This document shows positions 24,689 through 31,540 of a stretch of 32,052 nucleotides of DNA, in pieces. The notes beneath the pieces are model-generated. The model had not been told where the DNA came from. It worked only from the letters and a program-made list of their open reading frames with translations, and did no database searches. The stretch comes from Hyphochytrium catenoides. Taxonomy: Eukaryota; Protista; Hyphochytriomycota. Both the position numbers and the translations under genes were made by a program. The stretch spans positions 1 to 32,052 of the forward strand of contig FLMG01004093.1 of assembly GCA_900088475.1 (NCBI GenBank), read 5' to 3'. Positions within the stretch are counted from its first letter, which is position 1. Each line of letters begins with the position of its first letter.

Positions 24689-25882
24689 CTAAGACTGACT
24701 AACCAGCACATGGGAGAACTCCTCTTCTTCGTCATCATCTTCTTCATCGTCATCATCATCGTCTTCATCTTCATCATTGTCGTCTTGGTCTATTGCTAGT
24801 TTGCGAAGCAGATGATCAATTCCTTCTCCCAGTCTTTGCATGTAGCCTCTTTTCTCCGCTCTGGGCTGTCGTAACTTGCCCCTTGAGCCTTCCCCATCTC
24901 CTTGCCCTGCTGACTGTACCTCTTCTCCTGCCTCGCCATCGCCATCCTTCCCCGACTGTACGCCGACGATGGCCAGAGTAGAAGCTCCAATAGCAGCGGC
25001 TGTGGCAAATATTCGCCGTCCCCAGCTCAATATAAAGCCTGTGACCGCTAAAGGGTTGAAGTGCCTCACCAGTCCCAAACTGGACGCAACCTGCTGAATG
25101 CCTCGGTTGCCCAACAAGTAGGTGGCCAAGGAAGAATGACGAATGCTGCTCATGAACTCTTGCAGATCGTAGAACTCTGCCTCACAATAGAGCTCCTTAA
25201 GCTGTTGTCTGCCGCTAGGAAGCGCGACCTCTACTCCTCTGAGATAGTTCAATATAAGAGGAAAGTAGGTGGGATCACGGTCGATGAAGGGAATGCCGTC
25301 CTTCATCCTTCCAATAGCCGAGCAATAATCCACGTGCCGCACTAAGGCCGGAGCTCCCTATTGTCACGGACAAGATAGTCAGGCTTGAGCAAGGGACCAA
25401 AAAAGAAAGAGCAGAGCTTGAGGTAGAGAAAAGGGGAAAGGATAACTGTCAGTCCAAGAGCCTCAAAAGAGAGAGAGAGAGACACAAGGGGCAGCAACGA
25501 TTTTCCATAGATGAATTGCGCTACAGATGTCTATCTAGTCCTGCCTTCGAACGGCGACGGAGCTGTGCTAGGAGAGCCGTACCTGAAGAGTTTCCCACGT
25601 CGTCGTGAAGGTGATACCGCCAACATTCAGCTCAACGACACCAGAGCGGCGGATGGATTCTGGCAGTTGAAGCTCCGCTGCAGAAGCACTGCCATTTACA
25701 TCTCTGCAGATAGAGCTCCGCACTGGAAAATAGGTACGAAATGTGCGATGTAGAGGCGATATTTGCTTAGCAAACGGCGTTGACCGCGCTCGGGTTACCA
25801 TTGCCCTAAAGGTGTGCGGCCTGCCCCGCAGGAGAGAGCTTTGTAGCGTCCAATAGATCGCCTTCATTCTGCCAGCTCGCAT
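24689..25882 (-). CDS. KCTD-type BTB/POZ (T1 tetramerisation) domain protein
   Basis: Exon 25882-25583 (VVELNVGGITFTTTWETLQ) splices in phase 0 to an exon starting at 25357 (GIPFIDRDPTYFPLILNYLRG..LKELYCEAEFYDLQEF). A hydrophobic segment and a D/E tract follow. The start (25882 or 25867) and the 3' end are uncertain. Confidence 0.82.
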
Positions 25883-26607
25883 CCGGGGCCAATGTCAGTG
25901 GGTGCTGCTATGAAGTAGCGTCTGGCGGTCTGGGACTTATGCTAGTTCCCTCGCCGACTTGCCAATGCATTTCCAGGCTCTCAGCCTTCCATGCAGGCCG
26001 AGTATAGTCCTTAGTACCCGCCAGAGAGAATCTCACTGGTCCTCTAACAAGCACGGAGACGCAATGCCGCCGGCTCCTGCTTTGGCGGCAGCGGCGGCTG
26101 CTGGTGCTGCTGCTGCGGCTTCTGAAGTTGCTGTTAATGAGGCCAAGGGCTAAAAGCTATTATATTCGGTAATGTCAACGCTAGTCAAAGGGCTTCTCGT
26201 CTTACTTTAGTCTTTTTGCGAAAAGCTAAGGCTATAACGCTAAACTATACTCGGGCAGGTGCTTTCGTCTCGGTCATATTCGTACTTTCGATGTCTTCGG
26301 CTGATTTTATCTGCCACCGAACCTGATGCTTCTGCCTCTTCTTCGGTGGAGCCATCCTTCGCCTCGAGAGAGAGACGCCGCGATGACCGTGGGCTCTAGT
26401 GAGCACCAGCACTCAGAGACTGCGGCTGCCCCTTCCAGACAAGAGCTACGGGCAGCACCACAGAGAGGCTGAAGAGTGTCCCTGAGATTTGTCCAACGCT
26501 CTGCGCTGGCATAAGCGATTCTGAGGGCAAGCTGTCTCTTGCAGCGAGTAAAAAGTGCGCCCGCCAAAGGAGAAGCGAAAGGGAAGCTGGAACCGTTGTC
26601 TGGGACG

Positions 26608-26890
26608 ATGCCGAAGAATCAACGCTCCTTAGCGAAGCCTCTCGCTACTCTCTTTACTGTCTCAGCGCTGACGCTGGGTTCAATCGTCTACGTGCACTAC
26701 ATTCAGAAGAAGGAGCAGGAGGTAAGGCTCACCTTGCCTCAATGGACGGTCTCCTTGATACAGCGACCCTTCGGCTTGACGGAGGCCTTTCCCTGGCCGT
26801 CTGGGTTAACCTCAATCCTCTTCCGATGTTGACCAGGATATGAGGAGAAATGTTCTGAGAGATATTGAGGCGGACAGGAAGAGGTTCTGA
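26608..26890 (+). CDS. PET117: PET117-family cytochrome c oxidase assembly factor, 2 exons, 55 aa
   Basis: Exons 26608-26721 and 26837-26890 (intron GTAAGG...ACCAG) give MPKNQRSLAKPLATLFTVSALTLGSIVYVHYIQKKEQEDMRRNVLRDIEADRKRF. This fits the PET117 pattern: hydrophobic segment, VHxxQxxExxxxxxxVxRDxE. Confidence 0.8.
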
Positions 26891-26923
26891 AGCTCTGGAG
26901 CCTGGCGGACACTTGGTGACGGA

Positions 26924-29293
26924 ATGAGTTCCCTGATAGAACGCGAGCCGTATAGGCAAGGAGGAAGACTCTTGTTCTCGCACTTTCTTACAGATGACAC
27001 AGAGAATCACTCAGAGCCGAGTGAAGAGCTTACTCTGCCTGCTGGCGTCCGTCGCCTGGTCAAGCGCCATCCCTTCAACAAGCGCTTTGAACTCTTTCTG
27101 CCAGAGTATCCCGCAGAGAACCAAGGCAGAAGAGCGATAGAATATGGAACTAGAGAGCAAGCAGCCGCCTCGAGGGAGATCACAGAGAGCTTGGAGTCAT
27201 ACGTGGCGAGAATGTAAGGAGGGACCTGCCTCTTCTCTCTTTTCCTTACGCCTTCTCTCTCTCCGTCCAAATTCTCCTGTCCATCCTCCGACACTTCTTA
27301 CTTCTCCTCCAGGCTCTCCCCGTTTCACCTCTCGTCTTACTCTACTCGTTTTCGCGGTCTTTCTCTGTCCGCCCTCCCCTTATATGCTATCTCCTCCTTG
27401 GTTTCCTCTCTTCCTGGAACCTCGTGCTCACGACGGACATATATTCTCGCTCTTCGTACTGTCCTCTCTCATCCTCTCAGAAAGCCCAGTATATCCTCCT
27501 CGCCCTTCTTTTATGAGATCACGGGTAGGGCAGCAGGGCTTCTGCACCCTGATTTTCTGGCCCAATGGATTGTCCCGGCAGACATTGCGTTGCTGGTCAT
27601 GCTGAAGAATTGTCCTCTCGATGCTGCCAACTCCTTCTGCATAGTTGACGGTAAGAATAAGGAAAGACCTAGGGACGAAAGGAGATGACGGGGCCAAGGA
27701 GTGGCACAACAGCTAAAGCGTTGAACAGGAATCGGCAAGAGGCCATCCACGAGAAAAGAGAAGGAACTGCCGTACTGCCTATAAGTATTGCACTGAAGAG
27801 TGAAGAGGAGGGGAGAACAGGGGATTGACGGAGGGGGGCAGGGTATCGAGAGGAAAACAGAGAGAAGGAGAGAGACGAGACAAAGAAAGAGAAAGAGAGA
27901 CAGACGAAAGACAAAGGATAAATTACTATCAACTTTTCGCGTAGGTCATCTGCTTCTCAACGTGGATCAAGAGACCTACAGTACGCTAGGCCTACAAGGC
28001 ACAGCTATATCCTGGCCTCATTCCAGAAAGAGCAAGAAGAGGAAAACGAGCAAGGCCAAGTCGCTATCTTCTTCCGCTCCATTTTCTCAGAGATACAGCA
28101 TCTCAATAGATCTACGCGCAAAGACCTTCCTGCCAGAAAGCGCATATCACCGTCGAGTCATCTCCTGCTTTCAACGGGCGGAGCAAGGAGAGGTCACTCT
28201 GCTGGCCGCGTGCAGCAAGGATGGGAGGGCAGTAGAGGTTGACTGGCCGTCCTCCTTTAAGGTTGAGAAAGTGACGTGCAGTCCAGAACCCTTTGAGTTC
28301 ATGGATATCGCTCTTCCCAGAGCAGAGGAGCTGCAGGTCTGGCATCCTTCGCTTGTTTCCACCCTATCTCTTATCGTCAATTTCTCTTTGTTGTCTTTCT
28401 TTGGCCACTCTATCTTATAGTGGGGATGTCTTGATGGTCCTAGTCTTATAGAGCAGCCGCTTCTCTCTCTCTCTCTCTCTCTGCGTGCCTGGACCTAATC
28501 AGCTTGCTGCTTGTCCACCAATACGAACCTCTCACTTACGTAGCTCAAGCCTCGAGCTGTCGAAGTAGCGATGAAGCCTAGTCTTCCATCTCTCTCCTCA
28601 AGGTCGCAGTGGGTGGACCACCAGCTCCTACAGGAGAAGCTAAAGGACTTGAACGATTGGCTTGGGATCATGGCTTGTCGGATTGAAGAGCTCCTGAGCA
28701 CTCATAAGAACATAGAACCTTTTGTTTCCACCTACTCAAGGTACTTATGGCATTGCTGTTTAGAGTGACTGTCCTAGGCTAGGTTCGATCTCTTGGGAAC
28801 TGGAGACAGGGTGAGAGGAGAGAGAAGGGTTGAGGAAGAGTTCTCCGCTGACGGAGGGTATAGAGTGGTGTTGCAGAGACGCACTCGTAACATTATTCCT
28901 TCCAACTGATCCTCTTTATCTATGAGTGTCATCATGGGTTCAGCCTTCTTACAGCTCTTCTTCTCTTTTCCCAGTCCCCAAGTGGTTTCTACCGTCGGTG
29001 GATGTGCAGCGTACTCGCTAGCGTGGGAAGGCTTTTTCTCTTCTTCTACCGTGTTGGAAGGCATACAGCGAGCCCAGCAATTCCTCAAAGCAAGAAAGGC
29101 TCCATGGGCCGCAGTGCTCTGCTGGGGTTATGAGGACTCTCCGCTCTCCTGGTACAAGGAGTCTCGCTCTCTCTCTAAGGCGTCCAACCGCGACTATCTT
29201 CTTGACGGTGCCAATCATTATACGCTCATTCTCCTCCCAGACGGACAGATCTGGGTCACTCAGCTCCTGGGAGCCTTGGATCCCACAGAGTAA
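26924..29293 (+). CDS. RPP40: RNase P/MRP protein subunit p40, 5 exons
   Basis: Exons 26924-27213, 27481-27650, 27945-28336, 28544-28740 and 28975-29293 join in phase. Motifs: HPFNKRFELFLP, LLHPDFL, GHLLLNVDQETYSTLGLQG, RYSISIDLR, DWLGIMAC, WEGFFS, PWAAVLCWGYEDSPLSW, GANHYTLIL. Confidence 0.9.
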
Positions 29294-30085: not shown

Positions 30086-30185
30086 CATATCGGGTCTTGA
30101 CGCGCCTCCCTTCGCCCTCATAAGTGCATCATCTTACTAGTTCGTGCCTTTCTCTCTCCTTTGCAAAGAGGATTGGATCGGAACA

Positions 30186-30520: not shown

Positions 30521-31540
30521 CTTCTCCCGCTGTCGTTCCTTTCACTCTACCCTGGTCACGTCCTTACCCCGCCGCTGTGTGCAGAAAGCTAAACAGGTTT
30601 GGTTGCTGCGCTGGATGTATCACCCGGACGTGGTAAGTGCGCGAGCTGGTTAGGGAGATGACCGCGACGAGAAGCGTGTTCCCCTTGTGATTTGCTCTCT
30701 TTAGCCCTCTCTCTTGCTCTCTCTTTGTTCTTCCTCTTTCTCTCTCTCTCTCTCTCCGTCCCTCGCTCCGCTCCCCTTCCTCCTTTCTCTCTCATTCTCT
30801 CTACTCTGCTCTTCTGTCTTTCTCTCTCTCCCTCTCTCTCTCTCTCTCCCTCTTTCTTTTTACTTTCTTTCTNNNNNNNNNNNNNNNNNNNNNNNNNNNN
30901 NNNNNNNNNNNNNNNNNCTCTCTCTCCTTCCCCTCTCTCCCTCCACATCCTTCCGCATCCCTCCCCTAATCTTTTGGCGCTTTGCGCTCCTTAACGCTTT
31001 TTCCCGCGCTGTCTGCTCTTCTCCCACTCTCTCTCTCCTTTTCTAGATCGGAAAGAAGATGTTCGGCACTCTTGTAGACTATCTGAAGGAAATGAAGGGG
31101 AGAGCAGTGGAGGTAGAACGACTTCTACTTAGCTCTCCCTCTTTCTTCCCATCCGCTCTCATCTCCTGTGCTCTCTCTCTCTCTCTATCTCCTTCTTTCT
31201 CTCTTGTGCCACTCTTTACTCTCTATTCCTCTTTCACGCTGCCCTGCCCATATCTAACACTCATCCTCTCACTACTTTCTCTTTCCTTCTAACGCAACCA
31301 TGTGGACTTCCGCCATCTCCATCACTCTGTCGCCCTCGTCCGTCCGGCTAGCGTGTTATCGCAAACGCCAAGGATATTCTCGCGGAAGGCTTACCTGAGA
31401 AGCCGTCTGAGGATGGCGAGGGCGAAGGAAAGACGGAGATGACGATGCGGAGAAGGAGGTACAAGAGAGCTGTCAAAGTCCTGCAGACGCTGGCTCCTGA
31501 GGAAGTAGACGCCTTGCGGAGACCCCAAGATAGTGACTGA
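30186..31540 (+). CDS. WKF-domain protein (C7orf50/DUF2373 family), 4 exons
   Basis: Exons 30186-30473, 30585-30632, 31047-31112 and 31352-31540 join in phase 0. A charged N-terminus precedes EYLEDW..TWKFKKAKQVWLLRWMY..FGTLVDYLKEMKG..YKRAVKVLQTL. Confidence 0.87.

What the first reader, a model, noticed from the sequence alone, without database searches (positions are those of the whole stretch)
26608..29293. PET117 and RPP40 only 33 nt apart: candidate eukaryotic bicistronic locus
Seen: the PET117 stop (26888-26890) is separated from the RPP40 ATG (26924) by AGCTCTGGAGCCTGGCGGACACTTGGTGACGGA. This spacer has no AT-rich polyadenylation-like signal and no room for a 3' UTR plus promoter. Known: small-ORF-first bicistronic mRNAs occur in eukaryotes; vertebrate PET117 shares transcripts with KAT14/CSRP2BP, and RNase P subunit RPP14 is bicistronic with mitochondrial HTD2. 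Inference: one mRNA could couple a complex IV assembly factor to an RNase P/MRP subunit by leaky scanning or reinitiation, an independent RNase P-mitochondria pairing.
Basis: partly seen in the sequence, partly recalled or inferred. Interest (0 to 1): 0.75.

Follow-up and report, generated by a model that had tools for sequence, protein, structure and literature searches.

The report
PET117 and RPP40 genes 33 bases apart
In what is probably the soil pseudofungus Hyphochytrium catenoides, a tiny mitochondrial assembly-factor gene ends only 33 bases before an RNase P subunit gene starts, so the two probably share a messenger RNA, but no RNA data could be reached to prove it.

Summary
A two-exon PET117 reading frame (55 codons, 26608-26890) stops 33 nt before the only possible start codon (26924) of a five-exon, 455-codon RPP40 gene. 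Both are on the + strand and both are single copy in the genome.

The genome has 61 Mb in 4759 contigs. That count fits the published Hyphochytrium catenoides assembly (4758 scaffolds plus the mitochondrion).

The neighbouring genes lie about 0.7-0.85 kb away, so the pair is unusually tight. The spacer is 64% G+C, unstructured, and has no convincing splice acceptor.

Whether one mRNA carries both frames could not be tested. No RNA run was listed, no transcript contig of this locus is on record, and no close relative was found for a synteny check.

- Five more distant RPP40 loci have no PET117 beside them.
- Eleven other small mitochondrial genes of this genome show no such tight partner.
- PET117's start codon has the usual strong context, so the leaky-scanning signature is absent.

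Points in favour:
- A MOCS2A-MOCS2B tandem about 18 nt apart exists in the same genome.
- This scan's earlier notes list similar small-frame-first loci on other DNA of this genome.

Verdict: a sound candidate dicistronic or overlapping locus of a known kind, not yet proven.

The parts
25883..26607 (.). Gene-free region between a minus-strand BTB-domain gene and PET117. It is the only room for a promoter serving the pair, and is inferred to be a divergent promoter region.
   Evidence: BTB_2 Pfam hit on the minus-strand ORF 24692-25342. A further minus-strand ORF at 25568-25882 looks by eye like the start of a BTB domain; this was not run against Pfam. No start site was mapped.
26608..26721 (+). 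PET117 exon 1 (38 codons; N-terminal hydrophobic helix)
   Evidence: PF15786, E 9.7e-6, profile positions 4-29 of 67. GTAAGG donor at 26722.
26722..26836 (+). PET117 intron, 115 nt, GT..AG
   Evidence: Read-through would end the frame at 26830-32.
26837..26890 (+). PET117 exon 2 (17 codons plus TGA). It carries the V-L-R-D-I-E motif. It is in the same frame as RPP40 exon 1.
   Evidence: It is too short for a Pfam hit of its own. The motif's resemblance to other PET117 proteins rests on my own knowledge.
26840..26858 (+). The two AUGs between the PET117 and RPP40 starts. 26840 is in the PET117 frame and opens 16 codons that end at PET117's stop. 26850 opens AUG-UUC-UGA, ending at 26858. Both frames close before 26924.
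26891..26923 (+). Inter-ORF spacer: 33 nt, 64% G+C, no A/T-rich signal, no stable fold, no pyrimidine-tract acceptor
   Evidence: RNA fold z-score +0.96.
26924..27213 (+). RPP40 exon 1 (start codon and the conserved N-terminal H-P-F-N..E-L-F-L-P motif)
   Evidence: Alignment A1 with P0001, P0004 and P0005; exon check.
27481..27650 (+). RPP40 exon 2
   Evidence: Colinear with homologues; GT-AG borders and frame checked. An alternative in-frame acceptor lies 9 nt downstream, so the exon could start at 27490.
27945..28336 (+). RPP40 exon 3. It includes a lysine/serine-rich insert that is absent from the homologues.
   Evidence: PF08584, 49.4 bits.
28544..28740 (+). RPP40 exon 4
   Evidence: PF08584, 23.8 bits, E 3.4e-5.
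28975..29293 (+). RPP40 exon 5 with the TAA stop
   Evidence: PF08584, 51.0 bits.

Best explanation
Two genuine, single-copy nuclear genes lie head to tail with 33 nt between stop and start. One is PET117, a membrane-anchored assembly factor of cytochrome c oxidase. The other is RPP40, a protein subunit of nuclear RNase P/MRP.

Most likely they form one transcription unit, driven from the roughly 0.7 kb region upstream of PET117. Any PET117 mRNA whose 3' UTR is longer than 33 nt must contain the RPP40 start. The PET117 message therefore at least overlaps RPP40 and is probably a full dicistronic PET117-RPP40 mRNA.

RPP40 would then be made at a low level in one or more of three ways:
- by ribosomes that miss the PET117 AUG;
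- by ribosomes that resume scanning after the short frames opened at 26840 and 26850 or after PET117 itself, since all of these frames end before the RPP40 AUG;
- from 5'-shorter isoforms that begin inside PET117.

Shown: the gene identities, the exon structures, the spacing, the shared frame, the single copy number and the wide spacing to the neighbouring genes.

Inferred: co-transcription and every translational step.

Nothing indicates that the two proteins work together.
For: - Anatomy and Pfam identities.
- Both genes are single copy, so both must be expressed from here.
- The spacer is 33 nt, 64% G+C and unstructured.
- The upstream coding neighbour is on the other strand, about 0.7 kb away. 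The next open frame on the same strand is about 0.85 kb downstream.
- The genome-wide mean gap is about 1.7 kb, by my arithmetic from PMC5795050.
- All upstream AUGs open frames that end before the RPP40 AUG.
- In the same genome, MOCS2A, which ends in Gly-Gly-stop, is followed about 18 nt later by an ATG. That ATG is the likely MOCS2B start, ahead of the MoaE exons.
- In green algae, colinear frames this close are typically on one mRNA (PMC7896298).
- Unchecked leads from this scan: other small-frame-first loci in this genome, one of them reported on spliced RNA contigs.
Against: - No RNA evidence of any kind was available. No run was listed and no transcript-derived protein or contig was found.
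- PET117's AUG has the consensus A at -3, while RPP40 has the rarer G. This is the opposite of the algal leaky-scanning signature (PMC11291117).
- There are two intervening AUGs in about 200 nt, which is no clear depletion.
- As I understand the reinitiation literature, a 55-codon frame followed by a 33 nt gap is unfavourable for classical reinitiation. PMC5972666 surfaced but I did not read it.
- The pairing is absent from five other RPP40 loci.
- Eleven other small mitochondrial genes show no tight partner.
Confidence: 0.5

Rival explanations
1. Two overlapping monocistronic mRNAs. RPP40 has its own start site inside PET117, in the intron or exon 2, giving a leader of 35-200 nt with one to three tiny upstream frames. 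PET117 mRNAs are polyadenylated early, within RPP40 exon 1 or intron 1.
For: RPP40's AUG context and the short upstream frames would suit an ordinary leader. The leaky-scanning signature is missing. The pairing is not conserved elsewhere. From my own knowledge, compact protist and oomycete genomes tolerate promoters inside neighbouring genes.
Against: No promoter-like or poly(A)-like motif could be identified. The one shared 12-mer in the PET117 intron proved to be a compositional match. An early poly(A) site inside RPP40 would also truncate RPP40 transcripts.
Confidence: 0.3
2. Polycistronic precursor resolved by processing. A long primary transcript is cut, and the RPP40 part is capped by spliced-leader trans-splicing, as in nematode or kinetoplastid operons.
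For: An unchecked note of this scan (s1-347986) says many genes here have a splice acceptor a few bases before the ATG. Several of the starts I sampled do show a YAG just upstream.
Against: Within 17 nt of the RPP40 ATG there is no AG at all. The only two AGs in the spacer lack a pyrimidine tract. To my knowledge spliced-leader trans-splicing is not known in stramenopiles. No leader sequence was identified.
Confidence: 0.05
3. Translational read-through fusion. PET117 exon 2 and RPP40 exon 1 share a frame: TGA, then 11 sense codons, then ATG. Read-through of the TGA would give a membrane-anchored PET117-RPP40 fusion.
For: The shared frame is real.
Against: A shared frame is expected by chance in one case out of three, and about a third of algal dicistrons are in frame (PMC7896298). 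From my own knowledge, the base after the stop is A, which is not a read-through-prone context. RPP40 homologues start where this one does.
Confidence: 0.03
4. PET117 acts here mainly as a regulatory upstream frame that throttles RPP40. It is not an independently needed protein.
For: Its position and size resemble those of a long upstream frame.
Against: It is the only PET117 in the genome. It keeps the family's helix and motif and has its own spliced intron. The organism has a mitochondrial genome, and I presume it respires aerobically (PMC5795050).
Confidence: 0.07

Closest known systems
Green-algal nuclear dicistronic mRNAs (Chlamydomonas, Chromochloris, Auxenochlorella; PMC7896298, PMC11291117)
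   Same: Two colinear conserved frames with the small one first and an inter-ORF gap far below 100 nt. The first frame often encodes a small mitochondrial or assembly protein (LYR proteins, TOM22). There is no IRES-like structure in the gap.
   Different: In the algae co-transcription was shown by Iso-Seq, and translation was shown to work by leaky scanning. There the first frame has a weak start context and internal AUGs are depleted. Here there is no RNA evidence, the first start has the consensus context, and two AUGs intervene. The lineage, a stramenopile, is also different.
Human RPP14/HTD2 dicistronic mRNA (PMC4705651)
   Same: An RNase P protein subunit shares a locus with a mitochondrial protein.
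   Different: The order is reversed: RPP14 comes first and the mitochondrial HTD2 lies in the 3' UTR. The subunit and the mitochondrial partner are both different, and the human mRNA is experimentally shown. The resemblance looks coincidental.
MOCS2A/MOCS2B dicistron of animals, and its tandem counterpart in this same genome
   Same: The small frame comes first, followed by a very short gap: about 18 nt in this genome at contig C4108.
   Different: The MOCS2 products form one enzyme, so coupling has an obvious rationale. PET117 and RPP40 have no known functional link.
Ordinary upstream open reading frames in 5' leaders
   Same: A short frame ends shortly before the main start codon.
   Different: This frame encodes a conserved, single-copy, spliced protein of a known family, not a regulatory peptide.

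Membership tests
PET117 (Pfam PF15786) | Match to the family profile above the curated cut-off | tested here: inconclusive
Exon 1 alone scores 26.1 bits, E 9.7e-6, over profile positions 4-29 of 67; the cut-off is 27. Exon 2 is too short to score alone.
PET117 (Pfam PF15786) | Small protein with one N-terminal hydrophobic helix, followed by a charged segment with a V/I-x-R-D-I-E type motif | tested here: met
   55 codons; a hydrophobic stretch in exon 1; V-L-R-D-I-E in exon 2. That this motif is typical of the family is my own knowledge.
RPP40 (Pfam PF08584, Ribonuc_P_40) | Match to the family profile above the cut-off, colinear over the whole protein | tested here: met
   Exons 3, 4 and 5 score 49.4, 23.8 and 51.0 bits over profile positions 40-117, 152-203 and 213-286. 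All five exons align in order with three homologues.
Eukaryotic dicistronic mRNA (green-alga type) | Two colinear frames on one strand with a very short inter-ORF gap | tested here: met
   33 nt.
Eukaryotic dicistronic mRNA (green-alga type) | Both complete frames on one mature polyadenylated RNA molecule | not testable with these tools
   No RNA run was listed for the locus, so read laying could not be used. No transcript contig is on record.
Eukaryotic dicistronic mRNA (green-alga type) | Weak start context at the first frame and a stronger one at the second | tested here: not met
   PET117 has A at -3, as do 10 of 12 sampled starts. RPP40 has G. The sample is small.
Eukaryotic dicistronic mRNA (green-alga type) | Depletion of AUGs between the two starts | tested here: inconclusive
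   Two AUGs in about 200 nt, where about three are expected. Both open frames of 16 and 2 codons that end before the RPP40 AUG.
Eukaryotic dicistronic mRNA (green-alga type) | Colinearity conserved in related species | tested here: not met
   There is no PET117-like frame or motif beside RPP40 in five other eukaryotic loci: L006, L007, L008, L050 and L051. All five are distant, at no more than 39% identity. No close relative could be found.
Operon with spliced-leader trans-splicing | A 3' splice acceptor with a pyrimidine tract just upstream of the downstream start codon | tested here: not met
   The last 24 nt before the ATG hold no AG. The two AGs at the 5' end of the spacer lack a pyrimidine tract.
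Programmed stop-codon read-through fusion | Shared frame plus a read-through-prone stop context | tested here: inconclusive
   The frame is shared, which is a one-in-three chance. The context is TGA followed by A, which is not a known leaky context (my own knowledge).

The most novel reading that the evidence does not exclude
Hyphochytrium catenoides makes a true dicistronic PET117-RPP40 mRNA from which both proteins are translated. Together with the MOCS2A/B tandem and the other small-frame-first loci noted in this genome, that would extend nuclear dicistronic expression of conserved proteins to stramenopiles. Because the first start codon is strong, the mechanism would be reinitiation-based and would differ from algal leaky scanning.
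Probability: 0.3. Interest if true: 0.6.

Novelty: new member of a known kind. Interest (0 to 1): 0.38.

Why it matters
If one mRNA does carry both frames, this would be a clean case of nuclear dicistronic expression of two conserved proteins in a stramenopile. My literature searches found no such report for that lineage. It would add to the view that 'one mRNA, one protein' is often broken for small mitochondrial proteins.

There is also a practical point. A 55-codon spliced gene like this is easily missed by gene finders, so PET117 may be wrongly scored as absent from this organism. I did not see the published gene models.

The specific pairing of a complex IV factor with an RNase P subunit shows no sign of conservation or functional meaning.

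Tried and rejected
- RNA evidence. The look-up of sequencing runs listed no RNA holder for 26400-27300, so read laying could not be used. None was listed; that does not mean none exists.
- Transcript contigs through proteins. A profile made of RPP40 homologues plus the five exons as separate rows found no protein of this organism. The exon 1 ORF is not on record.
- PET117 relatives. The corrected 40-aa reference found no candidate sharing words, within a length range of 22-70 aa only. PET117 neighbourhoods in other species therefore could not be examined.
- RPP40 relatives. A full HMMER scan of 1.8 billion representatives with exon 3 gave only five weak hits. Two metagenome scans found none.
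- Promoter motif. A 12-mer (TCAATCCTCTTC) is shared by the PET117 intron and the leader of a Tim10-family gene and looked like an initiator. It occurs 45 times against 27 for the reversed control. Its flanks are not conserved and it has no fixed position before frames. I rejected it as compositional.
- Spacer structure or IRES. The fold is no better than shuffles, z +0.96.
- General rule for small mitochondrial genes. Seven LYR and four Tim10-family loci show no tight downstream frame. This was a rough, ORF-based look.
- Rfam. No family matched in the window.
- Literature. I found no paper linking PET117 with dicistronic expression or with Toxoplasma-type organisms in a relevant way. I found none on polycistrons in stramenopiles. 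Shared PET117/KAT14 transcripts were not verifiable.
- My first guess of a coccidian origin was wrong.

Full report
**What is there**

The + strand between 26608 and 29293 holds two intron-bearing genes.

PET117:
- It starts at ATG 26608 and runs 38 codons to a GTAAGG donor at 26722.
- It resumes after a 115-nt intron at 26837 and ends 17 codons later at TGA 26888-90.
- Exon 1 alone matches Pfam PET117 (PF15786) at E 9.7e-6, 26.1 bits. That is just under the whole-protein cut-off of 27.
- Exon 2 is too short to score on its own. It carries a V-L-R-D-I-E motif that I know from other PET117 proteins (my own knowledge).
They are 64% G+C.

RPP40:
- It starts at ATG 26924.
- I checked its five exons one by one: 26924-27213, 27481-27650, 27945-28336, 28544-28740 and 28975-29293.
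- All borders are GT-AG. No exon body has a stop. The three split codons are sense codons. The sum is 1368 nt, or 455 codons.
- Exons 3, 4 and 5 match Pfam Ribonuc_P_40 at 49.4, 23.8 and 51.0 bits, in profile order.

**Is 26924 the true RPP40 start?**

Yes, as far as sequence can tell.
- In an alignment with three homologues, all five exons fall in order.
- Exon 1 supplies the N-terminal segment with the conserved H-P-F-N..E-L-F-L-P motif.
- The N-termini line up.
- Exon 1 has no other methionine.
- Its frame is closed 36 nt upstream by PET117's own TGA.
- The spacer has no credible acceptor for an upstream coding exon.

**Whose genome**

The assembly has 61.0 Mb in 4759 contigs. [quoted passage not shown] The contig count and intron sizes fit. 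I take the identification as probable, not proven.

From those figures the mean distance between coding regions is about 1.7 kb (my arithmetic).

**Context**

- Both genes are single copy.
- The upstream neighbour is a minus-strand BTB-domain gene whose coding exons reach about 25882. That leaves roughly 0.7 kb before PET117.
- The next + strand open frame begins near 30144. It carries a sub-threshold WKF-like match and lies about 0.85 kb after the RPP40 stop.

The pair is therefore much tighter than its surroundings.

**Tests of the dicistronic reading**

Direct evidence was out of reach.
- A profile search that included every exon as its own row returned no protein of this organism.
- The exon 1 ORF is not on record.

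Indirect tests gave a mixed picture.

In favour:
- Any PET117 mRNA with more than 33 nt of 3' UTR must contain the RPP40 start.
- The spacer is unstructured, z +0.96, as in algal dicistrons.
- Every AUG upstream of RPP40 opens a frame that ends before 26924. These are PET117 itself, a 16-codon in-frame remnant from 26840, and AUG-UUC-UGA from 26850. Scanning or reinitiating ribosomes are therefore never carried past the RPP40 start.
- The same genome has MOCS2A, ending Gly-Gly-stop, followed about 18 nt later by an ATG. That ATG is the likely MOCS2B start, ahead of the MoaE exons.
- In green algae such closely spaced colinear frames sit on one mRNA (PMC7896298).

Against:
- PET117's AUG has A at -3, like 10 of 12 starts I sampled. 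RPP40 has G. This is the reverse of the weak-first, strong-second pattern that marks leaky scanning in algae (PMC11291117).
- AUGs are not clearly depleted between the two starts.
- As I understand the reinitiation literature, a 55-codon frame with a 33-nt gap is unfavourable for classical reinitiation. PMC5972666 was listed but I did not read it.

**Conservation**

RPP40 of this organism is very isolated. A full scan of 1.8 billion representative proteins gave five weak hits, and two metagenome scans gave none.

I examined five more distant RPP40 loci. None has a PET117-like frame or motif nearby.
- One is a transcript contig with a 200-nt leader.
- Two are genomic contigs from the same lineage as that transcript.
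- Two are from annotated genomes of other eukaryotes.

The pairing is therefore not ancient or widespread. Whether it is shared with close relatives is unknown.

**Is it a general habit of this genome?**

A rough look at seven LYR-family and four Tim10-family small genes found no tight downstream partner. Small mitochondrial genes are thus not routinely arranged this way.

Earlier notes of this scan, on other DNA of the same genome, list further small-frame-first candidates. These lie before OBAP, before TTC38 (reported on spliced RNA contigs) and at MOCS2. I re-checked only MOCS2, and only partly. The others are leads, not evidence.

**Rivals**

- The main rival is a pair of overlapping monocistronic mRNAs, with a start site for RPP40 inside PET117 and early polyadenylation of PET117 mRNAs inside RPP40. 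I could find no motif for either. One apparent shared 12-mer proved compositional.
- Resolution of a precursor by trans-splicing lacks an acceptor in the spacer.
- Read-through fusion rests only on a shared frame, which chance gives one time in three.
- A purely regulatory role for the PET117 frame is unlikely, because it is the only PET117 in the genome.

- RPP14/HTD2 is a documented human dicistron (PMC4705651). There the order is reversed and the partners differ.
- The held papers show only that PET117 and CSRP2BP/KAT14 are neighbours on human chromosome 20. Shared transcripts were not verifiable.

**Left out by rule**

The joined spliced proteins were not searched or folded. All searches were done exon by exon, by reference.

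**Verdict**

It is a new candidate member of a known kind of locus, and it is cheap to settle with existing or new RNA data.

Noticed in passing
window 26837-26926: PET117 exon 2 and RPP40 exon 1 are in the same reading frame, separated only by the TGA and 11 sense codons. Chance gives this one time in three, and nothing else points to read-through.
   Followed up: partly
window 27990-28090 (RPP40 exon 3): A lysine/serine-rich stretch of about 20-25 residues in RPP40 is absent from all aligned homologues. It looks like a nuclear localisation signal or a disordered insert.
   Followed up: no
RPP40 as a whole, window 26924-29293: This RPP40 is unusually isolated. Only five proteins among 1.8 billion representatives reach E 1e-3 with exon 3, the best at 36% identity.
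   Followed up: partly
G000 contig C4108, about 34250-35740, minus strand (L053): A MOCS2A-like frame ending Gly-Gly-stop is followed about 18 nt later by an ATG. That ATG is the likely MOCS2B start, with an intron after about 11 codons, ahead of the MoaE exons. It is a second tight small-frame-first tandem in this genome.
   Followed up: partly
window 26812-26823 and G000 C3773:46320-46331: The 12-mer TCAATCCTCTTC occurs in the PET117 intron and in the leader of a Tim10-family gene. Genome-wide it occurs 45 times against 27 for the reversed control, without flank conservation. It is probably compositional.
   Followed up: yes
upstream of sampled start codons (L010, L011, L014, L015): Several genes have a YAG a few bases before the ATG. 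This echoes the scan note on acceptor-like sites before starts. It could be start-codon context rather than splicing.
   Followed up: no
window about 30750-30800: A run of unknown bases (an assembly gap) lies in a CT/GA-rich stretch downstream of the WKF-like frame. CT/GA microsatellites are also common in the introns, for example at 28460-28482.
   Followed up: no
window 24692-25882, minus strand: A BTB_2 (potassium-channel tetramerisation type) domain gene with a very acidic tail is transcribed divergently from PET117.
   Followed up: no
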